Positions 15,627-64,000 of a stretch of 64,000 nt of DNA are shown here, in pieces. Every line of letters begins with the position of its first letter. Positions within the stretch are counted from its first letter, which is position 1. Origin of the DNA: Macrostomum lignano (taxonomy: Eukaryota); NCBI GenBank assembly GCA_002269645.1, contig NIVC01000896.1:279487-343486 (forward strand), in the 5' to 3' direction. The position numbers and the translations under genes were made by a program. A model generated the notes under the pieces. The model saw only the letters and a list, made by a program, of their open reading frames with translations, searched no databases and was not told the origin of the DNA.

Positions 15627-15949
15627 TAATCTACGCAGAGGAAGTTCATCAATTTGAATATTTGTGGCGACTGAATAGATTTAATTGCTTATATTGTAGC
15701 TACCAGTGACTACTCTAATCCTTACTTTTTTTCTTAGCGGTTCAAGGTCTTTTAAGTTTCTATGAGAGTGGTAAATATGATTTTAATAGTCAATCTACGA
15801 GCGCAATATTCAGACCATTCAAAAAATTTACTATTGACAACTATTAGGACAATGATAGATAGCATGTTTATAGGCGTTTGTAAATTTGTTTTACTTTTTA
15901 GCAAAAAATTAAATTAATAAATTGCAAGTTAGCTTCTTAGTTAAAGGCA

Positions 15950-30500: not shown

Positions 30501-31023
30501 AGCGTGCCCTCTGGTACGGCTGGGGCTCGATGCTGGTGAGCCTCATGGTCCCCGGCGCCACCCGGAAGATCCAATTGGGCCAGCGCAGCAGCAGCTCGGC
30601 GGGCGGCGCCACGTTGCCGACCTCGCCAGTTTCGATCGCGACAGCGTTCAACTCGCCGACGCGCGCTCCGCTGCCCTCGCTTGGTCCTGCCGCATTTGGC
30701 CGCCGCAGCAGTTAAGCGCGGCTCTCCACTCTCACCACGAGGAGGTAGCGGCATTTATCTGCACCGTGGTGCAAATAAATTAAGACTGCAAATAAATTAA
30801 GACTGCAAATAAATTAAGACTGCAAATAAATTAAGACTGCAAATAAATTAAGACTGCAAATAAATTAAGACTGCAAATAAATTAAGACTGCAAATAAATT
30901 AAGACTGCAAATAAATTAAGACTGCAAATAAATTAAGACTGCAAATAAATTAAGACTGCAAATAAATTAAGACTGCAAATAAATTAAGACTGCAAATAAA
31001 TTAAGACTGCAAATAAATTAAGA
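27590..31023 (-). mobile_element. RTE-clade LINE, near full length (APE endonuclease plus RT)
   Basis: Endonuclease ORF 30754-29195 (VGTLNCRTL, ALQEV, AYAP, LGDLNA, LDHVL, SDHRLL) and RT ORF 29174-27639 (FVDFRKAFDS, GVLQGDTLAP, YADD) are separated by one missing C at ~29215. It has a (TTG)n 3' tail at 27590-27609 and a candidate TSD CACCTCAG on both sides. Confidence 0.9.
30772..31023. repeat. 17-bp tandem array (TAAGACTGCAAATAAAT)n at the RTE 5' end
   Basis: About 15 essentially identical units lie between the RTE 5' region and the TSD. Confidence 0.95.
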
Positions 31024-46924: not shown

Positions 46925-47360
46925 GATGTCAACTTAAGCACCAGAATGGAGCCCGAAGTTCAGCTCCGGCCCAAACCGACTGCAATCGATAACTTGTCGG
47001 CCTAGACGACTAGAATCGCCGAGACATCCCATCCGGCTCCCTTCCTTGGGGTCCCAGGGGATAAAGGGGATAAAATGGGGATCTCATGTCAACTTAAGGC
47101 TCTGGAATGGAGCCCGAAGTTCAGCTCCGGCCCAAACCGACTGCAATCGATAACTTGTCGGCCCAGATGACTAGCATCGCCGAGACATCCCATCCGGCTC
47201 CCTTCCTTGGGGTCCCAGGGGATAAAGGGGATAAAATGGGGATCTCATGTCAACTTAAGGCTCTGGAATGGAGCCCGAAGTTCAGCTCCGGCCCAAACCG
47301 ACTGCAATCGATAACTTGTCGGCCTAGACGACTAGAATCGCCGAGATATCCCATCCGGTT
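46925..47360. repeat. ~160-bp tandem repeat, ~2.7 copies
   Basis: CAACTTAAG starts units at 46930, 47090 and 47251. Confidence 0.9.
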
Positions 47361-47666: not shown

Positions 47667-49505
47667 ATGTCCGATTTTACTTGCTCTTAATGTGGTCATC
47701 AATTCAGCAAAGCAGCCAATTTGAACCGACATCTCGAAACGACTAGATGTGGTCGCTGCTCATCTGAATCGTCTGGAGCCTTCGCGCCTCCGAGAAACGC
47801 ACGAGAGGCGCTTCAGTTTCTTGCGGTCGGTGGTAAGTATGTGAAAGTTTTTTTGAACCCAAACCTTTTTCCACGAACCGCAAATGAGAAGGAGTTCAAA
47901 CGTATTTGCGGTCTTAGTTATAGTGATTTCGATAGCTTCTCAGAAATGTTACCAGAAGTATCTCGCCTTCGTATTTTGACAAAGCCGTCTCGAATATTTT
48001 TGTACCTGAAGAAGCTTCGCCAAGGTTGCAGCTTTCAATCATTAGCTTTCAATTTCAACATTTCTGCCCAAAGAGCATGCGACATTTTTAGGGAGATTGC
48101 CAAGGAGCAGTACCTACGGGATCCATATCAACCGAGGTCGATAGCGTCGACTCCGATTCAGACTCTGCTTGAGGAAAATGTAGTACGCGATCAATTTATT
48201 CTCGGTGTATTTCACACACTACTCAAAGGCAAGAAGCTTGTTCTTCTAGTGGGTGATCATACTTACTTTTATCTCCCTAAGAGCAGCTCACACCACACGA
48301 AAATTCGAACTTACTTTTCCGGCAAGAAAATGAATGTGAACAAAAAATGGCGGTTGTCAACAGTAGAGGAAAAGTTATCTACACCGCTCCCCTTACCGCC
48401 GCTATCTCGCCAACAATGGGCGATGGGAATTTGACTGCAATGCAAGTTGACATGGAGGCTGAAGGACTAATAGAGCCCACTTTGTTGCGCATTCTATGCT
48501 CTGTACAGAAAGATTATCACGGTATTGGCATTTTCGACAAAGGTTACAGCCACCAGCTTTGTTCACCAACTTCGGTTAACTTCCGCGACTTTATAGAGAC
48601 TAATAGTAAAGGCTGCACGACGCTTCTATTTCCGACCAGTCCAGGTGACCGAGTTCTAAACGAGCAGTTTGAATTTGTAAATAATGAGGCTCCTGTTGGT
48701 GACCGATCAATACCAGGAAAGCTTACATCAATCGAAGCAAATACAAGTCGCTGGGCTACGCTTTTCCGTTATCTCGTAGAATGTAGCTTTGCTGCAATCA
48801 AGCAAGACAAATGCATAAATGAGCGACAGGAGCCGTACCAATGGCTACATGCCCCAGAGTTTACCGAACGCAGCCGGTTCGGTGTTGTTATTGAAAACCC
48901 CATGGCAAAATTCAACCGTTCGCATCCAGGATTTCAAGCTACAAGGAGTCTGCCGCCGTCATGGTCAGATTGCTCCATGTTCGAATATGGACGGAACTTT
49001 GCTAAACGTCTTTTCATTGCGAATGAGCTAGACGAAATTGAGCAACTTGAGTACAATTGCGATTTGACTCGAATACCAACGAGTTCTACCCGAAAATGGA
49101 CAGCAGTGGATCCCCTGGACCCTGAAAGTTCAGGGTTCCCCAGCGTTGACGAAAGAAATCTGGAAGAGCTTAGCATCGGCCCATACCACGTTCTTCAGTC
49201 AAAACGCTACATCGAAAACGTCAGAGTTCATGAGGTGCTCAGTAGCTACGCTGGAGACTCGTGGCGCGATTTCGAATTGTTGATTTCTGAACTGCCAAGC
49301 CATTTAAAATGCTGGAAGTTTCATCAGCGAGCGCCACCAAAGGGGTGGAGCAGTAAGTTTGGAGAATGGAGGCCATCTTGGATATATTTAGCCGTTCTTC
49401 ATTCCCGTCATCGGTCAAAAACTTACCGAGTTGTCCTTCGTGTTTGCGAAACTGCAAGCGGTAACCGATTCGGATTTCGTGACTCATGGCTGCTGCGTCT
49501 GCATG
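47667..49505 (+). mobile_element. ISL2EU/Harbinger-like DDE transposase, disrupted and cut off by the Polinton
   Basis: N-terminal C2H2 finger (C.*CGHQF..NL.RH, stop at 47688), HTH (LRQGCSFQSLAFNFNIS), GDHTYFYLPKSS..FSGKK, IFDKGY and RYLVECSF. Frameshift near 48340. The reading frame runs into AGTAGT at 49506. Confidence 0.65.
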
Positions 49506-49830
49506 AGTAGTATAGAAAAAGACGCTTCTAGACCCAGAGCACTTTTTTAATGACCGTTTTAAGGGTCTAGAGGGGGGACACGGGGGGTAAATAAAAAAAC
49601 ACATCTAAACACCCTTAACACATCTAATCACCCATAATCACCCCTAACAATAAAAATCACTTCCCAACACTTCCAAACACTCCCCAACACCCCCCTCGCG
49701 TCCCCCCTCTTAAGACCTTACAAACGGTCATTAAAATAAGGTCTGATCTAGAAGCGTCTTTTTCTATACTACTACTCTATAACCCCTTGCCCGCGCCGCA
49801 GGCGCGAAGGGTCTTTTTCTGTTACTAAAA

Positions 49831-50145
49831 ATGACCCGAGTTTACACCTTTTCTGTTAGTGATACTTTTGAGACTGTTGCTAAAAATGCAGAGATAATAA
49901 AACAACATATTTTGAATGGAATAATTGATGAAGTTTATTTAAAATATGACGACAAGCACGACCTAAAACTTTATCCATTAGAGCTAGATGAGATGTATGA
50001 TTTAGAACAAGAGGGTGAGTTAATATTTCAACTTGGAGATTATTTAAATTCGGATGATTGGGAGGTTAGATCAACAGATTCCGAATCAACAAATAGTTCA
50101 TATGAAACCAGTGATTCAGAGAATGAAAGTGAAATTTTTATGTGA
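49831..50145 (+). CDS. Small acidic viral hypothetical protein
   Basis: 104-aa ORF with an AAAATG start and a D/E/S-rich tail. Confidence 0.55.
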   Translation: MTRVYTFSVSDTFETVAKNAEIIKQHILNGIIDEVYLKYDDKHDLKLYPLELDEMYDLEQEGELIFQLGDYLNSDDWEVRSTDSESTNSSYETSDSENESEIFM

Positions 50146-50161
50146 AAAAAATATTTAAAAA

Positions 50162-50386
50162 ATGAACTATTATTCTATAACAGAAACGACATTTATTGTG
50201 AAAAATATATATAAAAAAATGAAGGTAAACTATTCCTACATCGGAAATGTGCCGATTAATGAACTTAATGAAAATTTAAGTTTGATAACAGTTGAACAAA
50301 TGTCAATAATAATATTAGTAACAATTATAGTAATAATATTGTTTTTGTTTGTTATAAAAAATTTACTACCATGTTGTCTTAAGTAA
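50162..50386 (+). CDS. Small viral membrane protein
   Basis: 74 aa with a single hydrophobic segment (IIILVTIIVIILFLFVI) and an AAAATG start. Confidence 0.55.
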   Translation: MNYYSITETTFIVKNIYKKMKVNYSYIGNVPINELNENLSLITVEQMSIIILVTIIVIILFLFVIKNLLPCCLK

Positions 50387-50396
50387 CTGTTTGAAC

Positions 50397-52007
50397 TTAG
50401 TTCGCAGACATTATCTGGTTCTCATAAAAAGAACCCAATATTTCTTCACCATCCTTATCAGCAATTATATAGGTTGTAGGGTTTGTATTTAAAACTTTAC
50501 TGATGGTAAATTTCTCACTTATTTTCCAATATCCTTTTCTTCCCTTTTCAAACTTATCTTTCCATTTATAGATATAAACAGAATCACCAACCTTAAAACC
50601 TATAGTTTTCTTTTTTTCAAAATCTCCAAAAGTAACCCTAACGTTTTCAGGATTGTTATAAGCTTGTTGAGGAGTCATCTTTATCGCCGAATGATATGAA
50701 TTATTATAATCTTTCACTACGTCTGGTAATATTTTTACCCATTTTTGGTTACCATTAAGACTAAACTGAAACCACAATTTCTTACCTAAAGTTCTATTAA
50801 ATCTTTCTATTAATGCGTTTTTACTCTCTCCATAAATAGAATAAATTTTATTAATATACTCCCCATTCGCGTCCTTTTTCCTTTCTTGTCCTTTTTCAAA
50901 ATGATATAATTTATACATATGAGGATTGTAAAATTCTTTTCCTTCGTCAACACACAACCTTTCACTTTTTTCTCCAAGACTTCTAAAAGCAGCAGCAACA
51001 TCCTCTCCCTTTTTGGATTTTAAAGGAACAGCCCACGCGTATCGAGTAAAACCATCTAATATGGTTAAGATATATTTATATCCTCTTTCGTTCGGCATCG
51101 ACATTAAATCAGCATACCAAATTTCATTCTTTTTGAAGTTCATGATTTTTCTATAAAATTTAGGTTTTCGATATTCTTTATGAAGAATCTTTGCCTCATC
51201 AGAACTTAACCCGCCGCCACTTAACAACAAACACTCAACACAATTATTTCCATGTTGATTATAATTAATTCCTAAACCAAATTTAACTTTAGACTGCAAG
51301 ATCTTTTTAACCATCCACCTAGTTAATTTTTGACCTACCGATAATCCCTGCAAGTTATCTAATCCTTGAATCATTTTTTGATCGGCTTCATGTTTTAATC
51401 TTAATGCTTCCTCGGGTGTGTTCTTATCAGCATCTCTGTATGCTAAGTCATGATAGTATGCTAACCAATCAATTCCATTTATGGGAATTGAATCGGCTTT
51501 TGGGGTGTCATCAGGATTTAATCTCAAATCTAAGCGAGTGCCGGGTAGTTTACCCTCAATCTTTCGAAAGAGGCTGGAGCACACCTTAAGCGGCGATAAT
51601 TACCGCCCATCTCCGTCTGCTCTCTGAACCTTCTCCTTATATTTAAAATACTTAGGAGCTTGGCTGCGCATTGCCACCGTGTCTTCAAGCTTTTTACCTT
51701 TGGGAAGAGGAGTTACCTCTGTTCCTTCAAAAGATTTCTCAATTGAAGTGGTACTTGAAGCAGTATGACGGGTTTCACGCAATTTGGAGATGTCGCCACA
51801 AATAGTGACTAGCAAGGACATTGCCTTCCTCACTCAGGCCACGGGTTAACCTGTGAAGTTCATTGATGGTAGGTGTAGTTCCCCTGTATATTTACCAGTA
51901 GTAAAGATTGGTGGTAAGCTTGTTAATCCTTTTTGAACATCTAACAATCCTCCTTCAAACACTATTTGATCGTTCCGAAGGAACGCGAACTTCGTTCGGT
52001 TGCTCAT
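50397..52007 (-). CDS. PLA2-like domain fused to a retroviral-type integrase (~435 aa), split by a group I intron
   Basis: Exon 1 (52007-51849) ends GELHLPSMNFTG. Exon 2 (51545-50397) starts PGTRLDLRL and contains IDWLAYYHDLAY (PLA2 HD) and the integrase D-D-E motifs WYADL, LCVDEGKEF and LIERFNRTL. Confidence 0.85.
51546..51848 (-). ncRNA. Group I intron ribozyme, subgroup IC1, 303 nt, no ORF
   Basis: Core motifs P AAAUUGCGUGAAA, Q CAAUGCGCAGCCAAG, R GUUCAGAGAGCAGA and S CUUAAGGUGUGCUCC occur in order. Helices: P1 with U-G at the splice site, P3 CAUCUCC/GGAGAUG, P7 GAGCA/UGCUC, P8, P9 with a GAAA loop, and P5abc. Confidence 0.9.
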
Positions 52008-52557
52008 TTTTAATAGCCATAAAAATACATGATAGCACCAATTGTTTTGCAAACTCTTCAATGGTTGGTTGTTGAACTTTTTTATAGCGATTATCTACGC
52101 TAGTTAAGTATCTTTTATTTCTCCAATTTTCAGACTTTTTAATCTGATCATCGTCTTTGTAACTAAATGAAGAAGCAGGAATGAAATGATCAATATCTAA
52201 CTTTCCAGTATAATTTTTTGGAACATAATAATTTCTTGTGAAATTTAACCAATCAAAAAAGAATTCTTTTGTGCAACCAAGATATGAGATATAGTCCTTG
52301 TCATTAAAATTTTTCAACGCCCAATTTATTCTATTTCTAATTAAAACAATATGTTTGTAATTATCATCAGTGTGATACTTATTTTTTCTATATTCATTCC
52401 ATTTATCTTTATTGTTTTTTATCCAAATAGCAGATGAGGTATTATGACAAGATCGACAATCATTTCTAAATTTTTTTGAATCATTTCTCCAAAAATAAAA
52501 TTCTTTCGTCATCGGTTTTTCTTGTTTACACTTAGTACAAATCTTATTAGTTTCCAT
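51955..52557 (-). CDS. HNH-family endonuclease with an N-terminal CxxC/CxxC zinc module
   Basis: CTKC..CRSC, then YLGCTKEFF..LDIDHFIPASSF..ENWRN..SVDN, a pattern typical of phage and giant-virus HNH nucleases. Confidence 0.7.
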   Translation of the reverse strand: METNKICTKCKQEKPMTKEFYFWRNDSKKFRNDCRSCHNTSSAIWIKNNKDKWNEYRKNKYHTDDNYKHIVLIRNRINWALKNFNDKDYISYLGCTKEFFFDWLNFTRNYYVPKNYTGKLDIDHFIPASSFSYKDDDQIKKSENWRNKRYLTSVDNRYKKVQQPTIEEFAKQLVLSCIFMAIKNEQPNEVRVPSERSNSV

Positions 52558-52582
52558 TTTATAAAAAATAAATTTAACAATT

Positions 52583-53251
52583 AAACTCCAGTATGTCCAG
52601 CAGCTTTCGCAGCAGCTAAAACAAGTTTTCGCGGTGTTTTAAATCCATCACCAACAGCTGGTTTGTTATTTATAGAATTAACAATCCATTTATACAAGCT
52701 GGTATTTTTAACAGCTCCTCCTAACTCATCATAAAAAATTCTAGCACTTATTAATTCATCCCTAGTATATAAATCGGGTTAAATTTTACCCTAGGGTTCG
52801 TAATAATATTAAATGCTCCGCCCAATTCTCTATATAGTTCATTTCGATCTTTAACAACGTTACCAATTCGATAATTACCACCACCTAAATCTGTCACAGC
52901 AATACTAGTTGGTGCAGGTCTCGGATATTGATCAACTCCACCCCTAATCTCTTCACGTCTAATTTCTGCAACTCTAAATATTGCTTGATCAGTCTCATAA
53001 GCAGGCGGCTCATCCAAAATTTCATCCTCTTTTGGCTCCGTATTTTTAGCAATTTTTTCCAGAAGATCTTTATCTGTTTTTTCTAGTTCACTAATTTTCC
53101 CAGTAATAGGATTAACAAAAGGAGCAGCAAATCTTTCACCCGCTAATTGTATTCCTAACTTTCTTTTTTGTAAATTTCTAACAAAATCAGAATATCTTTG
53201 CTTCTCTTTATAAATCGCTAACTCTCCATCAACGTCCATAAATTGACTCAT
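52583..53251 (-). CDS. Polinton hypothetical protein (one frameshift)
   Basis: 166-aa ORF with an AAAATG start. A 1-nt shift near 52775 extends it to a stop at ~52583. Confidence 0.5.
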
Positions 53252-53285
53252 TTTTTAACATAAAAAACTTTTTTAACTTAAAAAA

Positions 53286-54758
53286 ATGGCTGAAACAAAA
53301 ACTATGTGGAGTGATAAATTTCATTTCAAAAAGCACCGACAGTATATTAATGAGGTCAGAGCAAGAGATTTAAATTATACCCTACCAACAAGTGATAATT
53401 CAAATAACTTTACTACTGGAACGGTAACTTTTGACATCGGCGCAACCAACACTATATTGGATATGAAAAATGCGTTTTTCCGCGTTAGATGGTTGTATAC
53501 TAGAAATGATGGAACTGCTCTTGCAGCCGGAGATATCGCAGATCGATCCGGAATAATAATAGAAAATGATTGGTTTTATAAATGTTTTTCCCAAGCTCAA
53601 CTAACTGTTAATGGTGCTGAGGTTGAGACATCATCAAACCCCGCAGAGATTAATGGAGTTTTGAAACATTTAAATTATACTTATTTATCAAAACAAGTTG
53701 GTGATAATGTTGGGTGGATGCCGGATAAAGGTAACGGTCAAGCAGTAGTTTTCCCTAATGTACAAAACGCAGCCGGTGCAGATACTGCAGCGCTAATTGT
53801 TTACCTTAATACAAACATAGTTCCAGTTGTAACCACTATGACTAATACAAAAGATATTAATACTGGTTTTATAGATCGTCAGAATAAATTCCCAGTCGCG
53901 GTTTTAACCACAGCAACAGCATATGAGCAGGACTTTTCAATCTTTCCACTATTTGGGTTCTTCTCACCAAATCGGGTATGGAAAGGATTAAAATTTGGGA
54001 TACAGTTGCAAATATCTGGTGGATATCAGCCTAGGATACTTTATGGAACCTCAATTTCAACCGATATAGCAGTTCGTATAGATTCAATTCAATTAGTCGT
54101 ACCAACTATTGAGGTAACAGCCCCACTTTTAAAACACATCGATAATCAGTTAACGCATGATCAGGAAATATTTTATTTGAATCGTCGACATTTTATGCGA
54201 ACCATTAATAACAATCAGGATTCATTCCAGTGGCAAATACTGACATCAAAACGTCGGGTGAGATATATTTTTGTTTGGTTTAAGATAACAAATAGAAGGA
54301 GTAAAAGAGCAAATGGGGATTTATATTGGCTTCAATCCGGTGCCATAGCAGCACAAGCAGCCACCGCAACAGACAATGCGGCTGCAGCTATTAACGAGTT
54401 TAATGTTCAGAATATCCGCCTGCAGGTTGATGATCAATATTATCCGGTTAAAGATCCTCTTAATCTAAATATTGCAAATAATAATGTTAATGATTTTATA
54501 AAATATTATCAAGATTATGCCAAAAATGAAGCGTATGCCGTCCCTCAGTACACACCCACAGAGTTTCTAAACATCCATCCAGTGGTTGTTTATGATCTAA
54601 CGGCACAGAAAGAAAACGTAGCCAATATTGGACTTAATTATATGTTAGAGATTAATAAAACCGGTAATCAGGCACTTGACGCCCACGTATTGTTTCTAGA
54701 GGAATATATGTCAATTGCTAAAGCTGATGGCACGATTGTTAGGGACGCGCCGCTGTAA
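53286..54758 (+). CDS. Major capsid protein (double jelly-roll, Polinton type)
   Basis: 490 aa, beta-rich, with the motif TVTFDI..LDMKNAFFRV..CFSQAQLTVNGAEVE. It lies next to the ATPase and penton genes. Confidence 0.8.
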   Translation: MAETKTMWSDKFHFKKHRQYINEVRARDLNYTLPTSDNSNNFTTGTVTFDIGATNTILDMKNAFFRVRWLYTRNDGTALAAGDIADRSGIIIENDWFYKCFSQAQLTVNGAEVETSSNPAEINGVLKHLNYTYLSKQVGDNVGWMPDKGNGQAVVFPNVQNAAGADTAALIVYLNTNIVPVVTTMTNTKDINTGFIDRQNKFPVAVLTTATAYEQDFSIFPLFGFFSPNRVWKGLKFGIQLQISGGYQPRILYGTSISTDIAVRIDSIQLVVPTIEVTAPLLKHIDNQLTHDQEIFYLNRRHFMRTINNNQDSFQWQILTSKRRVRYIFVWFKITNRRSKRANGDLYWLQSGAIAAQAATATDNAAAAINEFNVQNIRLQVDDQYYPVKDPLNLNIANNNVNDFIKYYQDYAKNEAYAVPQYTPTEFLNIHPVVVYDLTAQKENVANIGLNYMLEINKTGNQALDAHVLFLEEYMSIAKADGTIVRDAPL

Positions 54759-54807
54759 GCGGCGCAGGTCTCCGACCGTCGCCCCTATTTAAATTATTTC
54801 TTTAAAA

Positions 54808-55558
54808 ATGGTAAAGGCAAAACACGATAAGATATTTCCAAATGATCCTTTTCTTTGTTTAGTAATTGGTGGGTCGGGTAAAGGAAAAACACACTTTGTT
54901 TATGACCTGTTAACAACAGATGGAATGTTAGACTATAATAATTTAATAATTTATACTAATAAACCTAGAATAAAATATTATGAATTTCTTAAACATGGAT
55001 TAAAAAACAAATTAAAAAAAGATGTCTTGTTTAGAATGTTAAGAGCATATGAGCAATATGAGGATGATGACGAACCGCGATTTAATCTAGCAGACATTGA
55101 GGATTTATGTAAAACAATGGCACAACAGCCAGAAAACATCACCGATCGCCCCGAAGGGTCGCGGACTTCGTCCGATCGCGCCCAACTGTTAGAGTATCAA
55201 CCCGATTAGCCTATGATCAAATTCCAAAACATGATAAAACACTAATTATTTTTGATGATTGTATTAATGACGGTGATCAAGAATTGCAAAAGGAAATTTT
55301 TGTTAGTGGTAGAGGAGATGGAATTGGAGCTTTTTATCTAACACAGTCTTTAGAGAATTAGAATCGATTATAAAAAAGAATGCAAGTTGTTGTGTAATGT
55401 TTGATTTAGATAATTATGATTTACAAAATATTCACGCGAGATTTAATCCCGGATTGGATGCAAAACCATTTAAAAGTATGTGTAAAAAAATTTGGGATGA
55501 TAGCCAATACAAACATATTTATATCAATCCGAGGTTAGAAAGGAAAATCGAATCTTAA
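54808..55558 (+). CDS. A32/FtsK-like packaging ATPase (two frameshifts)
   Basis: Walker A GGSGKGKT. In the shifted frame come Walker B LIIFDD and VSGR..FYLTQS. Shifts near 55170 and 55348. Confidence 0.85.
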
Positions 55559-55610
55559 CAAATTTGATAAAAGAAGATAATGAGGAAGAAGAATAATTCC
55601 CACTATAAAA

Positions 55611-56396
55611 ATGACTACAAATTTAAATACTATAAAACAATTGGTAGATCGAACTAATTCAAAATTTAGTACAACATTACAGTTTATAATGACAACCAGC
55701 GAGCAACGGATTCAATTGCGCGATCCATTACAACTTGATCAAAGCCTAAGTTATCAAATAGGTTTAATACTATTTTCGGTTTTCAACATGCCTCAATTAA
55801 TTAATGCAACAAATAATCAATTTAGATATTCTAAAGATTCCGGAGCCAATTGGACAACATTTAGCGTTAACCCAGGAGCGTATAGCTATACTGATTTGAA
55901 TGCTTATATAGAAGGAGAATTAACAACTAATGGTGATTGGGTAGCAGGAGCAATTGTTATAGGTGTTGATTTACCGTCTGGCAGATTCACACTATCACTA
56001 GGATCCGGATATCAGGTTGATTTCACAATTGCAAATTCACTCAGAACCATACTTGGATTTAATTCCCGAATAGTTACCACATCAAGCACCGGTGATACAG
56101 TTGGAAATATAGAGGGTGGAGTAAATACAATTAATATAACAACCGACATATCAAACGGTGGTTATATAACAGACGATAACGGAGTTTTGGTTCAACGTGG
56201 AATTATTTATTCAATCCCATTTCTTGCTGTTCCAATTGGAGAGAAAATGATTGTATCACCTCAAACCCCAATATATTACCCATTAAATCAATATAATGTT
56301 CAATCAATTTATATTAGGATTGTAGATGAAAGCGATAGATTAATAAGTTTTGGTGGGCAGTCAATAACAGTGATTTTACGTATAAAACAGGTTTAG
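55611..56396 (+). CDS. Minor capsid (penton) protein
   Basis: 261 aa with NSLRTILGF, SPQTPIYYPL and IRIVDESDRLISFGGQSITVILRIK, typical of the Polinton single jelly-roll mCP. Confidence 0.85.
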   Translation: MTTNLNTIKQLVDRTNSKFSTTLQFIMTTSEQRIQLRDPLQLDQSLSYQIGLILFSVFNMPQLINATNNQFRYSKDSGANWTTFSVNPGAYSYTDLNAYIEGELTTNGDWVAGAIVIGVDLPSGRFTLSLGSGYQVDFTIANSLRTILGFNSRIVTTSSTGDTVGNIEGGVNTINITTDISNGGYITDDNGVLVQRGIIYSIPFLAVPIGEKMIVSPQTPIYYPLNQYNVQSIYIRIVDESDRLISFGGQSITVILRIKQV

Positions 56397-56406
56397 TACT
56401 GTAAAA

Positions 56407-56616
56407 ATGGGTAATCGAACAACATGTTCGCGTGCAAAGCACGATAATAATAATAATTTAATAAAAAAACAATCAGAAAAAGTTAAAAAAGCTGAAGATA
56501 ATTACGAACTAGAACTAGCAAAATTAAGGCAGTTACAAGCTGATAAAATAAGAAAGGAATTGTTAAAACCCACACCTACGAAACTAACTAAAACCAAGAG
56601 TTTTTCAGGAACATAA
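56407..56616 (+). CDS. Small basic viral protein starting MGNRTT
   Basis: 69-aa ORF with an AAAATG start, tightly packed between the penton and protease genes. Confidence 0.55.
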   Translation: MGNRTTCSRAKHDNNNNLIKKQSEKVKKAEDNYELELAKLRQLQADKIRKELLKPTPTKLTKTKSFSGT

Positions 56617-56617
56617 A

Positions 56618-57058
56618 ATGACCATGACGTGGGATGATTTTAAACAAAGATATGGAACAGACACAACAAGCAATATCGAATTAACAAATTGGGCGAGGCA
56701 GTTAAAAATAAAACCATTCAGATGTGTTATGCGAGATGAGATCAAAGACTTACCACAATATGGATGTTTCATTGTTAATATTGAAACAACAAAAGAAAAT
56801 GGTGTTCATTGGTCAGCAGTTTATTCAAAACCAAAACTTGTTTATTTTTTTGATTCATACGCGCTTCCTCCGTTACAGGAAATAAAAGACAAATTTAATC
56901 ATACTAAAAATCGTTTATGTGGAGATCATCACGAACAATTTCAAACCTTTGATAAAAGTTATTGCGGGCAAGCGGCGTTGTATTTTTTATATCGACTTTC
57001 GAATGAAGCTCGTGTAAACCCCGAAGTATTTAAGACTATTTTAGACTCTATAAAATAG
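56618..57058 (+). CDS. Adenain-like cysteine protease
   Basis: Catalytic H-D-Q-C set in GVHWSAV, FFDSY and QFQ..SYCG. Confidence 0.9.
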   Translation: MTMTWDDFKQRYGTDTTSNIELTNWARQLKIKPFRCVMRDEIKDLPQYGCFIVNIETTKENGVHWSAVYSKPKLVYFFDSYALPPLQEIKDKFNHTKNRLCGDHHEQFQTFDKSYCGQAALYFLYRLSNEARVNPEVFKTILDSIK

Positions 57059-57068
57059 ACAGTAAAAA

Positions 57069-59120
57069 ATGTTATTTTCTGGAACACCCTCATGGAACGG
57101 AACAACAAGTAGTGGTGGTGGTGGCACATCTGGTGGAATAAGTGTTACATTTGGAGATAATCGATATATTAATGAGGATGAAGGTTATAAAAAAACTGAA
57201 ATTGATAATAAATTAAATTTAAAAAGAAATGTTGCAGATTCCTATACCAAAACTCAAATAGATGATTCACTAAATCTGAAACGGAACGTAGCCGATTCCT
57301 ATACCAAAACCGAAGTTGATAATTCATTAAATTTAAAACGCAATACAGCCGATTCCTATACCAAAACAGAGGTTGATAATTCATTAAATTTAAAACGCAA
57401 TACAGCCGATTCTTATACCAAAACCGAAGTTGATAATTCATTAAATTTGAAACGGAACGTAGCCGATTCTTATACCAAAACCGAAGTTGATAATGGATTA
57501 AATTTAAAAAGAGATGTAACTGATTCTTATTCTCGAACTGATTCTGATTCACGTTATGTTCAAACCACCGCAACCGGAAACCTAGATATGAGCAACAACC
57601 GAATTATAAATGTTTCAATTACAACTAGTGATTCAGTGGTTGATAAGAACTATGTCGATAATCAAGTTGCCACTCGTAGTGGTAATATTAATATGAATAA
57701 TTTTAAATTAACAAATTTATTATTTGGAACAGAGAACGCAGACTCGATAACTCTAGGCCAAGTAAACGAGCGAGCTAATGCAACCGACGCCGATATTTTT
57801 ACCACGCCGCTTACATCAAATACTTCAAATCCTGATGTTGTTCTTACAGCATCTGAAAATGGCAACACAGCTTTTCGAGTTGGAGATGGAAGCCTTGCGA
57901 CACAATGGTCACCAAATACCGGAACCACAACCAATATGGAAATTCAATTTGAATTTTTAGGTTATAATAGAAGAATATTTGAATTAAGAATTACAGGCAG
58001 TGAAACAATTGAGATACCCTCGGGGTGGTCGGTTCGCGCAAAAAATGTTGCTACCGATTCATGGACGACATTAACTACGTCGGGATCACCAGTTCAAGCA
58101 ACATCATTTGCTCTATCTAATTTAACGACTAATTTTTGGAAATATTATAGCGTATTCTTCCCAACTGGTGGTACCGGTACACAACCTATCGAGGTTCGTC
58201 AAATACAATTATTTGAACACCGTGTTGAAATTCAAGATCTTAATTGGCCAACTCAAATACTTTCTGCAGTTCCGCGAGCGTACGTAGATCAGCTAGCTAC
58301 TCCAACATCAAATGGTAGAATGTCTGGAAGCGATAAAAATAAATTGGATGGAATACCTGCTATTGATGCGGCCTTGTTCGAACCAGTAATTTGCAATTGG
58401 TCTGGATATCAAAATCCAACAACCGCCGGAGATATATATCCAGTCGGTTCTTTAATTGGTGACGCTTCTTATATCGATTATCAAAATGGAGCTAGAATTA
58501 CTCGTGAAACCGCAGTGTAAGTGGGCTTTACAATTAATTTCACACATTTTCAAAATATATCTGCGTCTTTCTTTTTCCGAGTTGCTAATGCTACAGGAGA
58601 TGGTGCAGATGCGGTTTGGTTTTATGCATACTGTCACCAACGTCCAACATCGGAATTTGGACTGGATTATCAACCGACGCCGGATTGATAGTTTTTGCAA
58701 GTGAGTGGCATGATAGGTTTGGAGTTGTTTGGAGTAATAAAAAATCAGACGGATCTACGGTTCGTAACGATGTTAGTAGTGATGCGGATCAAACTGTAGC
58801 CTATGCTAATATTGATAACGGCGATTGGCATTTTTTGAATTAATATTTTAAATCAAAGGGTTTGGTACCGATTACAGTCATACAATGTTGCTGGTGATTC
58901 TTTTACCCTCATTGGACAGAACGTTTTCACATATGATAGTGGAACTTGGGGAACTTTAGATAAATCTGGAACCCTTATGGGTTTTGGTGCTCGAACTGGT
59001 GGAGCGGATGCTGCACATTTTATTCGTGGTGCGTTGTATGTGGTAGTACGTCGTTTGGTTATGTTTTTCCCTCTACTGCTTATTTGGAAAAACCTCCTAC
59101 TCAAATATAAAATATTTATA
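57069..59120 (+). CDS. Fibre/spike-like protein with 19-aa repeats, a discoidin-like domain and a frameshifted LamG-like C-terminal part
   Basis: Six units of LNLKRNxADSYTKTEVDNS, then GNLDMSNNRIINV and GDGSLATQWS..PSGWSV. Broken frames beyond 58520 include DNGDWHF. The region after 58520 may be a separate gene. Confidence 0.6.
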
Positions 59121-59122
59121 TA

Positions 59123-60428
59123 CGAGGGACACTCCAAAAGTTTTGCAATTCAACCACTTGCGCAAGTCGCACAATCTTCAAAATCAACCCTCTGTACAAT
59201 AAACATGTACATAGTCCCCACCTCAATTTTTTAGTAATTTCATACATATATGCCTGCTCAGCCCCCAGTCAAAGTCAGTGACTCCTTAACCTGTACTGCT
59301 GCGGCCATGGAATTTGAATCGTGAGCAGAATCGGCTACTAATTTGGTACTGCCACAAGCGAAAGCTCACGGCGCTTGAGACTCATGCCGAGCTACTAGCA
59401 ACATTGGAGGCTCAAGCACCGTCATATGCTACGGTTACACGCTGGTACCGCGAGTTCCAGGCCGGCAGGACCAGCTTTTCTGACGACCCCCGGCCCGGGA
59501 GACCTCCGACAGCAGCGACGGAGGAAAACATCGCTGCAGTGCAGGAGCTGATCCATCAGGATCCGCGAATCACCACGGACACGTTAGCTATGAATGTTGG
59601 CATCGGATCGGCAGCGGTCGATACGATTCTACACGATCACCTCAGAGTCAGGAAGCTTTGTGCCCGATGGATACCCCACATCCTGACAGATGCTCAGAAA
59701 CAGGCCCGCATGGAGTTCTGTCAGTTTCTCATCGATCGATATGAGCACGGGAGCCATCAGCGCCGCTCTGAAGTCATCACTGGTGATGAGACGTTTCTCT
59801 ATCATTTTGACGTCGAGACAAAGCGCAGCAGTGCAGAGTGGGTGCCGGAAGGTGGGCAACGACCCCTGAAAGCAAGGCGGTCCCGGTCCCAGGGCAAGCG
59901 ATGTTTGCCATCTTCTTCGACTCACAAGGCGTGGTGGCGATGGCGAAGCTGGAGGGTCAAGCTACAGTCACTGCTCGATGGTAACTGAAGAGTGCTTGCC
60001 TGTCGTGATCGACAGCGTGACCCAGAGGGCACCAAGGACGGAATGCGAGGGCGGAAGCTTCACCATGACAACGCCCCCGCCCACACACGGCTGCTGCAAC
60101 TCGAGCGTTCCTGGACCAAGAGGGCATTGCAACGTACCACACCGCCCTACTCACCAGACCTCGCCCCCTGCGACTTCTGGCTCTTTCCAGAAATCAAAAA
60201 GTCGCTTAGGGGTGCAGGTTTCAGTCCGACGAGGAGCTGGAGCAGGCGGCGAAGGAGGCGACTGACGGCATCCCAATTGAAGAGTTCCAGGGCCTCATGA
60301 ACAAGTGGCTCGGAAGAGCGCACAAGTGTTTGCAGTTCCGCGGGAGCCTACTTTGAAGGATTGTAATAGAAAAGTTTAGCAGAATTAACTTTAAATAGTC
60401 GAATTGCAAAACTTTTGGAGTATCCCTC
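59123..60428 (+). mobile_element. Mariner (DD34D) transposon with a frameshifted transposase, inserted in the Polinton
   Basis: TIRs GAGGGACACTCCAAAAGTTTTGCAATTC / GAATTGCAAAACTTTTGGAGTATCCCTC with TA flanks. Motifs WIPHILT, ITGDET, HHDNAPAH and YSPDLAPCDFWLF. Confidence 0.9.
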
Positions 60429-60443
60429 TAAAATTTGTATAAA

Positions 60444-60770
60444 ATGGCTTTTAGTAGAACTCCATCGATGCGGCAAAATAATGTTATTATTCCTATTCCT
60501 AAACAAGAATCAAATATAAAAACATTCAAATCTCATACCAAATTTTTATTTAGTACTGTAAATGTTCAGGATAATAAGAAGCTTCAAGAATTAATTAAGT
60601 TATTAAAAAATCATATTATACTTCAAGAGTTTTGGAAAATAGGATTTAAATGGGAGAAAAAAGAAAGAATCACTCCAATACAATACCTATTGAGCTCCGG
60701 GCAAATACCCAAAGAGCGCGGGGAATTCATTTTGGTGCTATTAAAAATAGACGAGAATGTCGGTATCTGA
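60444..60770 (+). CDS. Viral hypothetical protein
   Basis: 109 aa from an AAAATG start. Confidence 0.5.
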   Translation: MAFSRTPSMRQNNVIIPIPKQESNIKTFKSHTKFLFSTVNVQDNKKLQELIKLLKNHIILQEFWKIGFKWEKKERITPIQYLLSSGQIPKERGEFILVLLKIDENVGI

Positions 60771-61400
60771 AGCAGATAAATGGGAACGCGACCGGTTCAA
60801 CCAACGTAAAGGTCAGATGTTAAGTAATGTTGATCGAATAAACTATGATTATGATTTATATGCTAAAAAAGTAAGAAGAGTTTCAAACCATATAAGAAAT
60901 ATGGACTTTTTCAATATTGGATTTGGAAGCTTATCAATGTTATGTGTAATCGTTTTAGGTATTTTACAATCTATTCCAACTCTTAATTTATCTCAATTAT
61001 TTTTAGGTATTTCAATTGGCTCAATATCAGGTTTTGAATTGATCAGAACTTATCAATACTTTTAGCAATTAAATTATATCTTAAAAAAAGAAAGGAAAAA
61101 TATAAATCATTAAGAGATTGCCAAGCAATATAAAAATCATTATATTTATATGTGCAAAAAATATTGGATGACGGAGAGATAACGATTCATGAATTATCAA
61201 CCGCGGTTGAGTTATATGAAAAATATTTAAAAGATAGAAATAGAATTTTAGATGTTGAAACTTTTACCGATATGGAATTAAAAGAGTTGAGACTCGATAA
61301 ACCCAAAGCTCCACCTATAGAAACATTAGGTATTTACGAACCTGAAACTATTGCTACTGGGGCACAAAGCCCGCGGTCAGGAAGTGCTGTAGAACTTTCA
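60757..61400 (+). CDS. Two-TM Polinton membrane protein (GasderminX-like), frameshifted
   Basis: Two hydrophobic segments, then in a shifted frame KILDDGEITIHEL..YEKY, which resembles the LxDGxIxxxE..KY motif I recall from this family. Confidence 0.5.
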
Positions 61401-62828
61401 TGTTGTTTAGTTTTTCTAATGCATATGTTATATATTCTTTCCCAAAGTGGTAACTCTCTTCTGATCCTAGGTTTAAATTTTTTATCAATACATAAAAATT
61501 CTAATGACTTTTTCAATAACATTTCGTTAGGTATGTTACCAATCCTTATAAACTTTGTATTCTCTCGAATAAGAAAATTGAAATAATATCCAACTAAAAT
61601 TAAAATCCTTTCGGAGTCTTTCGAACTTAATCCCTTTCCTTTATTTAAATGGAAAAAGTTATTATATAAATAAACATTATTTCCGGAATTAAAATTGGAT
61701 CAGAAATGTCTCTTGTAAGATTTCTTAAAATTGTGTTTTAAAATAGTAATATGAGTTTTCAATCTTTTTTGTTTTTTCAAATTGATATATTTTAGAACAT
61801 GAATAACACATATGATATATATTCTCCGTTTGCTGTTTGCCCTCTGTGCATAGTCACATTACATTTATTACAAACATAAATGTCTTTCATTTTTTTGTTA
61901 TTTTTTTAGATTAAAAATGGAAGCTGGTTCAAAACCGATTCTAATGTGATTAATTATCTCACACCCAATATGTTGGAGAATAAAGAATATAATATTATAT
62001 GTTTGAGACAGGTTAAATTTATTGGGCTTCAATCAATATTTTTACAATTAGATGGGCAAAAATTTTATGTCTAAGCGGAGATGATGTTAAAAATTTTCCT
62101 GTTTTAGTTATTAATAAACCTAAAGCGTTTGTTATGAAATACTGCAACGAGGGTGGATTGCAATTTAAACTAAAACAAACAAATAATAAAAAGAGTGATA
62201 GGACTGTAAAATTGGCGGCTGTTTGGGAGGATGACGACGAAGACTAAATTTTTTATAAGAAAATGGATACGATAAAAATCCTTATCACTAAAGAGCGTGA
62301 ACTTAATGATATTAATAAAAAAAAAATATAATTATATCTCAGAAATATCATGAGTATGGGGACGATATGTTTCCCATCCGATATGAAATAGATAAAAGAA
62401 AACGTTTTTTAATCTGCAGATTGCTTTATGCTGAAAATAGTAATTGAAATTGAAATAGATAGGTTGGTTAGAAAAATAAAAAAACTTAGGAAAAAAATAA
62501 AGGATTGTTTAAGTTACCCTGACGACTGCGAGGAAATTGGCCTTCAATAATATATGAAATCGAAATGGATATTTATGCTAAACAATTACATGCTTTAGTT
62601 TTTTTACGAAGGGTCGCGACGATAAGTAATTTTTCTGTTAATCTCTTCCAGTTATTCAAGACTTTTTCCTTATTTAATTTTTTAAGTTCTTTTGGAAATG
62701 TTGAATAATAATTATCTATATCTTTTTCATATTCTAGAAATGTATTATATTCACAATCACATTCGATTCACAATCACAATCGTAATAATAATTATTTATT
62801 GCCGCTTTGTATTCATTATATTTACTTA

Positions 62829-64000
62829 TTATATCTTCTTTTTGTTTTTTATTTTTATCATATTTTTTATCTCTTCTTTTAAACCATATGGATATGTTTT
62901 AATTTTATCATCTAAATATCTTTTATCATCAAATGGACTTAATGTTTTTTTATCTGTCTCGATGACAAACATCTGATGCTTATCTGAATTTAATCGATAT
63001 TGTGGAGCATGATAATTTTCAATTGTATTAAGGTAATCTAAAAGTACGTTTTTATAATCATCAAATGTTATCTTTTTTACTGCTGCTCTTGATACCCCTT
63101 TTATTTTTTTTACCTCTCCCTCCTGTCCTAAAACCTTAAATGCATAGCATTTTGATCTTATTGCTATAAACTCGGTTATGATTTTGCTATTTAATTCATC
63201 TTTCATTTTAAGTACAACTTTTTTATTTTGATCTGATTTTAAAGGATGGTTATCCGGATAGTCGGAGGTATCCAATGTATCCTTAATTTTTTCCATATCT
63301 TTATAGACATCGAACCTTTGGTTCGCGGACTGCCCGTCCATCTGTTTCAACCTTAAATACCAAACTGTCGGTGTCTGCATATATTGGATAGTTATCTGGC
63401 CATGTTTTTTTATAACATCATAATAGTATTCATACATTACCAGCTTTGCAAAATCTAAAAACAACCATTCAATAAATATTGGTTTAAGAAATTTTGTTGT
63501 TTTATTTCTCATATGAATACCCATAAAGTTATCATCAAATTTTATAAAGTCTTTAAAGTTAGGTTTTGAGAAATATTTCTTTGCTTTATCAATATCCTTT
63601 TCTAAATGGAATTGGGTTCTATCTCTAATATTTTCAACCGTTTTTCCATAAAAAGCATTATTCATTAATTTCCAATAATCTTTCTCAAAATTTGTTTTTG
63701 ACATCTGTCTCTGATTTGAATTAAATCAATTATATTTAGCTAACCAATCTTCCTCAATAAACGATATTGTTCGATGTACTTTGTACACTTTTAATCCCTG
63801 TTTTCATAAAATTGTAGAAGCTTTATAATGCACTACATAGTTTTTCTTATCATGTAAATTTAATATTAATTTTTTTTGTGCTAGATGTTTTGCATTATCT
63901 ACTTTAGATAATCTTTTTGTGTTTGTGATAAATCATCTTCATTAACTGAACAATGCTCTGGAGCTAAAGGTATTTATATGTTTTTTGCTTTTGCTTCCCG
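62829..64000 (-). CDS. Protein-primed DNA polymerase B, C-terminal part (frameshifted; N-terminus outside the window)
   Basis: KLMNNAFYGK, YADTDS in a shifted frame, IAIRSKCY, KIKGV and LSPFDDKRY. Upstream fragments read KLILNLHDKKNYVVHY. Confidence 0.92.

What the first reader, a model, noticed from the sequence alone, without database searches (positions are those of the whole stretch)
51546..51848. Group I (IC1) ribozyme intron inside a protein-coding gene of an animal endogenous Polinton-like virus
Seen (minus strand): the 303-nt insert folds into a complete IC1 architecture. P1 pairs exon ACAGGU with GCCUG (51839-51835) and has the U-G pair at the splice site. P2.1 is GUCAC/GUGGC and P3 is CAUCUCC (51792-51786)/GGAGAUG (51614-51608). 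P4 is UGCGUG/UGCGCA. P5abc is complete, with CUUCAAG/CUUGAAG, an A-rich bulge, a GAAA L5b loop and P5c AGAGG/CCUCU. P6, P7, P8 GGCGGUA/UAUCGCC and P9 (GAAA loop) are also present. Removing the insert joins NFTG to PGT in frame. Established: nuclear group I introns are essentially confined to rDNA, animal examples come from mitochondria of corals, sponges and placozoans, and viral ones from phages, chloroviruses and giant viruses. Inference: this ribozyme sits in an mRNA encoded in an animal chromosome and entered with a virus. I cannot check whether Polinton group I introns have been reported recently.
Basis: partly seen in the sequence, partly recalled or inferred. Interest (0 to 1): 0.96.

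Follow-up and report, generated by a model that had tools for sequence, protein, structure and literature searches.

The report
Group I intron in flatworm Polinton integrase
A real self-splicing-type (group I) intron interrupts the integrase gene of a decayed virus-like Polinton sitting in what is probably a flatworm chromosome. It belongs to a mobile intron family shared with other Polinton-like elements and giant viruses, but this copy looks like a fossil, not a working ribozyme.

Summary
The 303-nt insert (51546-51848, minus strand) is a genuine group I intron. It scores 62.1 bits on Rfam RF00028 (threshold 50) over the full model. Eight related introns give strong covariation: 94.6% of cells paired and 38 of 72 pairs with compensatory changes.

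It splits the Gly|Pro codons of the calcium-loop motif (NFTG|PGT) in a phospholipase-A2-like + rve integrase gene. More than 100 homologs read that motif without interruption.

Six relatives from metagenomes carry a related intron at exactly this site. Some hold an HNH or a restriction-enzyme-like ORF in the P2.1 loop. The closest relative has neither intron nor ORF. In the window an HNH homolog is free-standing just upstream. Related introns sit in giant-virus capsid and RNA-polymerase genes.

The host is probably Macrostomum, on one 97% protein match.

All six relatives end in G and the window copy does not. The element also has two frameshifted genes and a mariner insertion, so the copy is probably inactive.

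Group I introns in Polinton-like viruses of protists were catalogued in 2025. This is therefore a new member of a known kind in an unusual host context.

The parts
51546..51848 (-). Group I intron, ORF-less, 303 nt
   Evidence: RF00028 62.1 bits, above the gathering score of 50. The 5' bound comes from the P1 U.G pair in the covariance-model alignment. The 3' bound comes from intron-less homologs reading NFTG|PGT and from six relatives with an intron at the same codon boundary.
51554..51792 (-). Catalytic core P3-P9, including the P3/P7 pseudoknot. P5abc is 51683-51760, P7 is 51618-51624/51576-51581, P9 is 51554-51573.
   Evidence: RNAalifold on 8 related introns recovers P3, P4, P5, P5a-c and P6. 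With P7, P8 and P9 added, 94.6% of cells are paired and 38 of 72 pairs show compensatory change.
51795..51853 (-). P1 (exon CAGGU 51849-51853 with guide GCCUG 51835-51839), a P2 hairpin, and P2.1 (GUCAC 51805-51809 / GUGGC 51795-51799)
   Evidence: Covariance-model alignment. P2.1 covaries and varies in length among relatives (5 bp here; 11, 15 and 18 bp in L001, L004 and L011). In the relatives its loop is where the ORFs sit.
51849..52007 (-). Integrase exon 1 (53 codons, ends ...HLPSMNFTG), open
   Evidence: ORF list and sequence. Aligns with the N-termini of P0001 and P0004.
50397..51545 (-). Integrase exon 2 (PGTRLDLRLNPDD...HDLAY... then the rve core), open to its stop codon
   Evidence: Pfam rve 9.6e-08 and Phospholip_A2_4 0.0076. 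1178 homologs, most with PF08398+PF00665.
51955..52557 (-). Free-standing HNH/endonuclease-VII-like ORF (200 aa), open. It overlaps the start of integrase exon 1 and ends about 105 nt upstream of the intron site.
   Evidence: PHROG 1035 endonuclease VII E=7e-08 and phrog_2255 HNH endonuclease. 34% identity over full length, E=4e-35, to the ORF inside the intron of L005. Absent from the closest relative, L002.
52581..53251 (-). Upstream gene X, homolog of L002 3-554. Broken: at least one frameshift.
   Evidence: tblastn finds the homology split over two frames. Sequence.
53286..54758 (+). Major capsid protein (double jelly roll type), open
   Evidence: Homologous to L001 3595-4851, which hits PF21738 DJR-like_dom at 7.4e-12, and to the L004 capsid protein.
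54808..55558 (+). Packaging ATPase (A32-like). Broken: at least one frameshift.
   Evidence: Weak Pox_A32 hit with a Walker A motif. Homology to the L004/L005 ATPases lies in two frames.
59124..60428 (.). Mariner-like transposon inserted into the element (36-nt terminal inverted repeats, degenerate transposase)
   Evidence: Inverted repeat I2. ORFs and a GC jump.
62829..63704 (-). C-terminal 291 codons of a protein-primed DNA polymerase B. The gene runs off the window, and only this part is open here.
   Evidence: 40-50% identity to the C-termini of 1100-1400-aa proteins. One of four scanned hits PF03175 DNA_pol_B_2 at 3e-25, and three of four carry PF02945 Endonuclease_7.
49506..64000 (.). 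Polinton-type element: low-GC block. The left edge is approximate, at a 268-nt palindrome. The right end lies beyond the window.
   Evidence: GC profile, palindrome I6/I1, gene content as listed above.

Best explanation
This is an ORF-less group I intron with a Tetrahymena-like (IC1-like) P4-P6 domain. It is inserted between the Gly and Pro codons of the PLA2 calcium-loop motif in the PLA2-like + rve integrase gene of a Polinton. The Polinton is integrated in an invertebrate chromosome, probably Macrostomum.

The intron belongs to a site-specific mobile family. Related introns occupy the same codon boundary in at least six other Polinton-like integrase genes. Some of those carry a homing-type endonuclease ORF in the P2.1 loop. 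More distant relatives sit in giant-virus capsid and RNA-polymerase genes.

In a working ancestor (inferred), the RNA would fold on itself, and exogenous G would attack after the U of the P1 U.G pair. The intron's terminal G would then direct exon ligation and restore ...NFTGPGT.... Spread to intron-less integrase alleles would be driven by the endonuclease, which here is a free-standing HNH gene next to the intron site.

The copy in the window is most likely a fossil. It lacks the terminal G, and the surrounding element carries frameshifts and a transposon insertion.
For: Identity:
- RF00028 62.1 bits, above the gathering score of 50, over the full model.
- RNAalifold finds P3-P6 with 25 of 51 pairs compensatory.
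- The full structure shows 94.6% of cells paired and 38 of 72 pairs compensatory. None of 500 shuffles reached this, and slid controls gave 35-46%.
- The window copy has its own compensatory pairs, so it evolved under selection for structure.

Host gene and junction:
- Pfam rve plus PLA2-like.
- Every listed homolog whose called protein spans the site reads G|P without interruption.

Same-site relatives:
- L001 (65.3 bits), L003, L004, L005, L011 and L016.

Presence/absence:
- The closest relative, L002 (74% aa identity on exon 2), has no intron and no HNH.

Endonucleases:
- Window HNH versus the L005 intron ORF, E=4e-35.
- PHROG endonuclease VII/HNH hits.
- L001 intron ORF with a weak RE_Eco47II hit.

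Giant-virus kinship:
- The same P5abc core occurs in L006-L008 (NCLDV-type capsid N-terminus) and in L010 (RNA polymerase largest subunit, after the DFDGD motif), at 101-105 bits for L009-L011.
- HNH relatives occur in a giant-virus MAG.

Decay:
- Six of six relatives end in G and the window does not.
- The G-C pair at the expected G-binding position of P7 is unchanged.
- ATPase and gene X each have at least one frameshift.
- There is a mariner insertion.
Against: - No transcript or splicing evidence of any kind is available.
- The non-G terminus could be an assembly error.
- An in-frame G nine nucleotides upstream could serve as a substitute splice site.
- Both integrase exons and the HNH ORF are still open, which is unexpected for an old fossil.
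- The host assignment rests on one 61-aa match at 97% identity.
- The right end of the element, and so its terminal repeats, lie outside the window.
- Endonuclease activity and target site are inferred only.
- The IC1 subgroup was not tested against subgroup models.
Confidence: 0.8

Rival explanations
1. The intron is still a working ribozyme in this copy. Either the non-G terminus is a sequencing or assembly error, or exon ligation uses the in-frame G nine nucleotides upstream and gives an integrase with three extra residues in the calcium loop.
For: Only one helix position is unpaired in the window alone, and several pairs are kept by lineage-specific compensatory changes. Both integrase exons and the HNH ORF are open. 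The nine nucleotides differ from L001 mostly at what would be third codon positions.
Against: No homolog among the 120 inspected has the three extra residues. Intron-less relatives of the L001 lineage (P0004) lack them too. The guide-sequence pairing test does not favour the upstream site (-2.7 against -3.3 kcal/mol). Other genes of the element are frameshifted and a mariner has inserted.
Confidence: 0.13
2. The insert is removed, if at all, by the host spliceosome at GT-AG sites, or is simply retained. The group I fold is irrelevant to present-day expression.
For: The element sits in a nuclear genome with a spliceosome.
Against: That GT-AG junction would delete the conserved GPGTRL residues, which every homolog spanning the site keeps. 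The covariance-model score and the covariation show the sequence evolved as a group I ribozyme. No branch-site or transcript evidence exists.
Confidence: 0.04
3. The element is not in an animal chromosome. The contig is chimeric, or it comes from a protist or food organism sequenced alongside.
For: The host assignment rests on one short match. The nearest relatives are all metagenomic, and the intron family is shared with giant viruses of protists.
Against: The element is on the same 64-kb sequence as the caspase-domain genes, one of which matches Macrostomum at 97%, together with a LINE, a Tc1-like transposon and minisatellites. A mariner with intact terminal repeats has inserted into the element. 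The PolB relatives are of the HNH-bearing type that PMC10748475 reports from nematodes, oomycetes and molluscs.
Confidence: 0.06

Closest known systems
RF00028 group I introns catalogued in Polinton-like viruses of protists (Paulinella micropora, Desmodesmus armatus, Rhodomonas lacustris; PMC12220804, 2025)
   Same: The same RNA family, found by the same covariance model, inside genes of integrated Polinton-like elements. HNH and GIY-YIG homing endonuclease genes were noted in the same elements.
   Different: Those hosts are protists. In Rhodomonas the introns sit in a gene of about 50 aa upstream of the capsid gene, and no homing enzyme was linked to them. Here the host is apparently an animal. 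The target is the PLA2 motif of the integrase. The same site is occupied in several lineages, with three endonuclease arrangements.
Group I introns of giant viruses (Nucleocytoviricota) in capsid and RNA-polymerase genes
   Same: The P5abc core is shared: a 33-nt pattern matched exactly, with 56-74% identity over the intron core. Insertion is at highly conserved motifs. HNH relatives occur in a giant-virus MAG.
   Different: The target genes differ. The window intron scores lower on RF00028 (62 against 101-105 bits) and has its own P7 sequence, kept paired by compensatory change.
Collaborative homing in phages: a free-standing homing endonuclease next to an ORF-less group I intron (Zeng et al. 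2009; Bonocora and Shub 2009, as summarised in PMC11296320)
   Same: An ORF-less intron, with an HNH-type endonuclease gene immediately beside the interrupted gene. Relatives carry the homologous ORF inside the intron. This is the series of stages proposed for how mobile introns arise.
   Different: Cleavage of the intron-less allele is shown for the phage cases and is only inferred here. Here the setting is a eukaryotic virus-like element.
Tetrahymena-type IC1 nuclear rDNA introns
   Same: P2/P2.1, a three-way P5abc with an A-rich bulge and GAAA L5b, conserved J8/7-P7 sequence, and the U.G pair in P1.
   Different: This intron lies in a protein-coding gene, not rDNA. There is no P9.1/P9.2. 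Subgroup membership was not tested with subgroup models. The window copy does not end in G.

Membership tests
Group I intron (Rfam RF00028) | Covariance-model score at or above the curated gathering score over the full model | tested here: met
   62.1 bits against 50, model positions 1-253, E=3e-15. Confirmed. Missed by the whole-window filtered scan.
Group I intron (Rfam RF00028) | Conserved core helices P3-P9 with the P3/P7 pseudoknot, supported by covariation | tested here: met
   94.6% of cells paired, 38 of 72 pairs with compensatory change, 0 of 500 shuffles as high, slid controls 35-46%. RNAalifold independently recovers P3-P6.
Group I intron (Rfam RF00028) | U.G wobble pair at the 5' splice site in P1 | tested here: met
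   Exon CAGGU pairs with GCCUG, and the U aligns to the model's splice-site U. The same is seen in L001 and L011.
Group I intron (Rfam RF00028) | G-binding pair in P7 | tested here: met
   The G-C pair at the expected position of P7 (alignment columns 205/277) is invariant in all 8 sequences, including the window.
Group I intron (Rfam RF00028) | Terminal guanosine at the 3' splice site | tested here: not met
   With the 3' bound set by intron-less homologs, the window intron does not end in G. L001, L003, L004, L005, L011 and L016 all do.
Group I intron (Rfam RF00028) | Self-splicing with guanosine cofactor | not testable with these tools
   No transcript or biochemical data are available.
Subgroup IC1 | P2 and P2.1, a P5abc three-way junction with an A-rich bulge and a GNRA L5b, and assignment by subgroup-specific models | tested here: inconclusive
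   The architectural features are present. No subgroup models were available, and P9.1/P9.2 are absent.
Mobile (homing) group I intron | Presence/absence polymorphism at one precise site in homologous genes | tested here: met
   The same Gly|Pro codon boundary is occupied in the window and six relatives. It is empty in L002, P0004 and over 100 others.
Mobile (homing) group I intron | Intron-encoded homing endonuclease | tested here: not met
   The window intron has no ORF. Relatives have one: HNH in L005, a decayed one in L011, and a PD-(D/E)xK-like one in L001.
Collaborative homing (free-standing endonuclease + ORF-less intron) | Endonuclease gene adjacent to the intron-bearing gene | tested here: met
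   HNH ORF 51955-52557 ends about 105 nt from the intron site. It is homologous to the L005 intron ORF, E=4e-35.
Collaborative homing (free-standing endonuclease + ORF-less intron) | The endonuclease cuts the intron-less allele at or near the insertion site | not testable with these tools
   Inference only.
Polinton/Maverick | Retrovirus-like rve integrase | tested here: met
   PF00665 9.6e-08, 32.7 bits against a cut-off of 32.6. 1178 homologs.
Polinton/Maverick | Protein-primed family B DNA polymerase | tested here: met
   The C-terminal 291-aa ORF is 40-50% identical to the C-termini of long proteins. Of four scanned, P0137 hits PF03175 at 3e-25. The ORF itself has no direct Pfham-style profile hit: no Pfam family at E up to 10, and the gene runs off the window.
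Polinton/Maverick | Double-jelly-roll capsid protein and packaging ATPase | tested here: met
   The capsid protein is homologous to the PF21738-bearing L001 and L004 proteins. ATPase: weak Pox_A32 hit plus homology to the L004/L005 ATPases.
Polinton/Maverick | Terminal inverted repeats and target-site duplication | not testable with these tools
   The right end lies beyond the window. Only a left-edge palindrome is seen.

The most novel reading that the evidence does not exclude
Intron-bearing polintoviruses infect, or recently infected, animals. Other copies in Macrostomum or related invertebrates would then carry a canonical version of this intron that self-splices from nuclear-encoded mRNA. 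That would be the first group I splicing in a metazoan nuclear genome, with an HNH endonuclease still driving the intron between Polinton copies and with gene flow to giant-virus introns.
Probability: 0.2. Interest if true: 0.8.

Novelty: new member of a known kind. Interest (0 to 1): 0.6.

Why it matters
This locus shows that such an intron reached an animal chromosome as a passenger of a Polinton.

The wider result is a site-specific intron family aimed at the PLA2 catalytic-loop codons of Polinton-like integrases. It is seen at three stages:
- an endonuclease ORF inside the intron;
- no ORF;
- a homologous endonuclease gene beside the intron.

The family is related to introns in giant-virus genes. 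This ties Polintons into the same pool of selfish elements as giant viruses and gives a natural series for how mobile introns assemble.

It also gives a practical warning. Default filtered Rfam scans of long sequences can miss such introns.

Tried and rejected
- **Whole-window Rfam scan at gathering threshold.** No hits. Rejected as a negative, because the short-stretch scan scores above threshold.
- **Other Rfam hits in 51300-52100** (glutamine riboswitch, lncRNA pieces, sR60). All far below their thresholds, so treated as chance.
- **A second intron elsewhere in the element.** None at E<=0.1.
- **An alternative 3' splice site nine nucleotides upstream.** It is in frame, but no homolog has the extra residues.
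- **GT-AG splicing.** It would delete conserved residues.
- **P10 guide pairing as an arbiter of the 3' site.** 4-5 bp in the relatives but only about 3 bp in the window, so not decisive.
- **Exact-sequence look-ups** of the window capsid protein and of the Macrostomum protein. Neither is on record.
- **Word-indexed homolog search for the HNH ORF.** Nothing found. Relatives were found instead through PHROGs, direct comparison and viral contigs.
- **PDB sequence searches** for HNH, the L001 ORF, PolB, the putative protease and the capsid protein. Nothing useful.
- **Pfam on the putative protease and penton ORFs.** Nothing found, so those two labels are my reading only.
- **tRNA scan.** None found.
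Full report

Yes. Read on the minus strand, 51546-51848 is a 303-nt insert between ...ACA GGT and CCC GGC ACT....

A whole-window Rfam scan at gathering threshold found nothing. A scan of 51300-52100 gave RF00028 Intron_gpI at 51858..51555 (-): 62.1 bits against a gathering score of 50, E=3e-15, all 253 model positions. A 14.5-kb scan gave the same single hit at E=5.5e-14. The first negative was therefore a filter miss.

The covariance-model alignment places the splice-site U of ACAGGU opposite the G of GGCCUG.

**2. The host gene and the junction.**

- Exon 1 is 51849-52007 and ends ...HLPSMNFTG.
- Exon 2 is 50397-51545 and begins PGTRLDLRLNPDD...HDLAY. It continues into an rve integrase core (PF00665 9.6e-08, PF08398 Phospholip_A2_4 0.0076).
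- A database search with exon 2 found 1178 homologs, most annotated PF08398+PF00665.
- Among the 120 listed, every protein that spans the site reads H(L/I)PG.(N/S)(F/Y).GPGT.L..RL without interruption.
- The closest, P0001 (74% identical over exon 2), reads YNFTGPGTRLELRLNPD. Its DNA (L002) is uninterrupted at ...ACT GGC|CCA GGA....

Removing the 303 nt therefore restores the conserved motif exactly, in frame. The motif is the calcium-binding loop of parvovirus-type PLA2 domains. PLA2 domains in Polintons have been noted before (PMC3671162, PMC8502044).

**3. Related introns at the same site.**

Some database 'proteins' start inside an intron, which led to DNA loci carrying a related intron at exactly the same Gly|Pro codon boundary.

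| Locus | What is there |
|---|---|
| L001 | RF00028 65.3 bits; exon 1 ...YSFTG, then TAACCTTGGCCTGAGTG... |
| L003 | 5'-cut contig |
| L004, L005 | Two contigs from one sample |
| L011 | Found by scanning metagenome contigs for a 33-nt P5abc pattern |
| L016 | Second-closest integrase, 68% identity |

The pattern occurs once in the window and in none of 100 shuffles. Core identity to the window intron is 78% for L001, 74% for L004/L005 and 68.5% for L011. The integrases are 62%, 49% and 38% identical at the protein level.

**4. Structure and covariation.**

I aligned eight intron cores: the window, L001, L004, L005 and L011, plus three from other genes.

- RNAalifold on its own recovered P3, P4, P5, P5a, P5b, P5c, P6 and P6a. 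Of 51 pairs, 25 are kept through changes on both sides.
- I then added P7 (the pseudoknot with P3), P8 and P9 by hand. Now 94.6% of 538 cells form standard pairs and 38 of 72 pairs show compensatory change.
- None of 500 shuffles reaches any observed measure. Sliding the 3' partners by 1-3 columns drops pairing to 35-46%.
- Part of the structure was drawn from these same sequences, which favours it somewhat. The size of the effect, and the independent RNAalifold and Rfam results, make the conclusion safe.

The window copy carries several compensatory pairs of its own, in P4, P5a, P6 and P7. Its lineage therefore evolved under selection for the fold.

P2.1 also covaries. It is 5 bp in the window and 11, 15 and 18 bp in L001, L004 and L011 (read).

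About 5 bp can form.

The architecture resembles IC1: P2, P2.1, and a three-way P5abc with an A-rich stretch and GAAA L5b. I had no subgroup models, so that label stays untested.

**5.

In L001 and L003 the intron ends ...CUG|CCA. In L011 it ends ...CUG|CCA, in L004 and L005 ...AUG|CCC, and in L016 ...GUG|CCA. All six end in the guanosine that the second splicing step requires; that requirement is established group I chemistry.

The window intron, bounded by the same codon boundary, does not end in G. The G-C pair at the expected G-binding position of P7 is unchanged, so nothing suggests a matching change of specificity.

The only in-frame G, given the P1-defined 5' site, lies nine nucleotides upstream. 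Using it would add three residues to the calcium loop. No homolog has them.

Pairing between the guide region and exon 2 (P10) is 4-5 bp in the relatives but weak in the window. It does not discriminate between the two sites.

One further helix position is unpaired in the window alone.

**6. Endonucleases.**

- In L005 the P2.1 loop holds a 239-aa ORF. In L011 it holds a decayed one. In L001 it holds a different 233-aa ORF with an ID...ELK motif and a weak RE_Eco47II hit, E=2.4e-4, below the cut-off.
- L004 is the ORF-less twin of L005.
- The window intron has no ORF. But the 200-aa ORF at 51955-52557 (-) is 34% identical over its whole length to the L005 intron ORF (E=4e-35). It hits PHROG endonuclease VII/HNH families (7e-08).
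- That ORF lies between gene X and the integrase. It overlaps the start of exon 1 and ends about 105 nt from the intron site.
- In L002 only 4 nt separate gene X from the integrase start. The HNH gene is therefore an insertion.
- HNH relatives occur in viral contigs, including a giant-virus MAG where sub-threshold RF00028 hits follow the ORF.

An ORF-less intron beside a free-standing endonuclease, with relatives carrying the ORF inside, is the arrangement known from phages as collaborative homing (Zeng et al. 2009; Bonocora and Shub 2009, as summarised in PMC11296320). Cleavage specificity here is inference.

**7. Wider kin.**

The same P5abc core occurs in other contexts:
- In viral contigs of 100-133 kb, inside an NCLDV-type capsid gene...MGGG|intron|NNLLMQLVAYGAQDIYLTGN (L006-L008).
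- In L010, inside an RNA polymerase largest-subunit gene just after the DFDGD motif.

L009-L011 score 101-105 bits. The family is therefore shared between giant viruses and Polinton-like elements.

**8. The element and its host.**

A low-GC block runs from about 49.5 kb to the window end. It encodes:
- the integrase;
- a double-jelly-roll capsid protein, homologous to PF21738-bearing proteins;
- an A32-like ATPase;
- a repeat-rich fibre-like protein;
- the C-terminal 291 codons of a protein-primed PolB.

The PolB relatives are proteins of 1100-1400 aa. Of four scanned, one hits PF03175 and three carry an Endonuclease_7 domain. That is the HNH-bearing pPolB2 type described from nematodes, oomycetes and molluscs (PMC10748475).

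- Open: both integrase exons, HNH, capsid.
- Gene X: at least one frameshift.
- ATPase: at least one frameshift.
- One mariner-like insertion with 36-nt terminal repeats.
- Polymerase: open only in its last 291 codons within the window. It runs off the end.

The rest of the window holds four caspase-domain ORFs, a LINE, a Tc1-like transposon and many minisatellites. One caspase-domain ORF is 97% identical over 61 residues to a Macrostomum lignano protein. The host is therefore probably this flatworm or a close relative. That rests on one match.

**9. Literature.**

Full-text searches found no report of a group I intron in an animal Polinton or in a Polinton integrase.

They did find a 2025 survey reporting RF00028 hits in Polinton-like viruses of Paulinella (53), Desmodesmus (2) and Rhodomonas (44). 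In Rhodomonas the introns lie in a short gene upstream of the capsid gene (PMC12220804). The category is therefore known. The host, the target gene, the recurrent site and the endonuclease series are new details.

**10. Verdict.**

The finding is a genuine group I intron of a mobile, site-specific family. It was brought into an invertebrate genome by a Polinton. This copy is most likely an inactive fossil.

- Confidence in identity and family: high.
- Confidence in 'fossil': moderate.
- Confidence in host: moderate.

It is a new member of a known kind.

Noticed in passing
window 11924-21546 (+): Four tandem, apparently intron-less ORFs of 456-539 aa, each with a caspase domain (PF00656, E from 5e-05 to 2e-35). 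The last shares a 61-aa stretch at 97% identity with a Macrostomum lignano protein annotated as TIR-domain-containing.
   Followed up: partly
window 1-64000 (method): The Rfam scan of the whole window at gathering threshold returned no hit. Yet the intron scores 62 bits against a threshold of 50 when 0.8-14.5 kb is scanned. The speed filters lose it in the long scan.
   Followed up: yes
window 59124-60428: A mariner-like transposon with 36-nt terminal inverted repeats (89% complementary) and a degenerate transposase, inserted inside the Polinton.
   Followed up: partly
window 49506-49773; L001 about 180-370: A 268-nt palindrome (27-nt perfect outer arms plus 43-nt inner arms) at the left edge of the low-GC element. 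L001 has a comparable palindrome near its end. It could be a terminal structure of this element family or an unrelated foldback insertion.
   Followed up: no
window 57069-58520 (+): A fibre-like ORF with six 57-nt (19-aa) tandem repeats (..NLKRNVADSYTKTEVDNSL..).
   Followed up: no
window 62829-63704 (-); P0122, P0135, P0137: The polymerase C-terminus matches long PolB proteins that carry an Endonuclease_7 (HNH) domain. This is the pPolB2 type reported from nematode, oomycete and mollusc Polintons.
   Followed up: partly
window 2581-5555, 26135-26950, 42646-43269, 46926-47358: Long minisatellite arrays (27-, 28-, 24-, 26- and 161-nt units). They explain the extreme GC skews at 2-6 kb and 42-44 kb.
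   Followed up: no
window 27639-30754 (-), 37507-38781 (-), 47721-49510 (+): A LINE-like pair of ORFs (endonuclease + reverse transcriptase) in a 65% GC stretch. An intact Tc1/Sleeping-Beauty-like transposase. Two overlapping ORFs with no family hit directly left of the Polinton.
   Followed up: partly
L007 (5876 nt), L009 (1195 nt), L012 4591-5488: Dense intron loads in viral and metagenomic contigs. L007 has two RF00028 hits plus a third copy of the P5abc core pattern on the opposite strand, all within 5.9 kb. L009 has two RF00028 hits in 1.2 kb. In the giant-virus MAG locus L012, two sub-threshold hits follow an HNH ORF.
   Followed up: no
L010 362-6203: An RNA polymerase largest-subunit gene split by a group I intron right after the catalytic DFDGD motif. 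The second exon is unusually long (1299 aa) and may also hold an intein-like insert.
   Followed up: no
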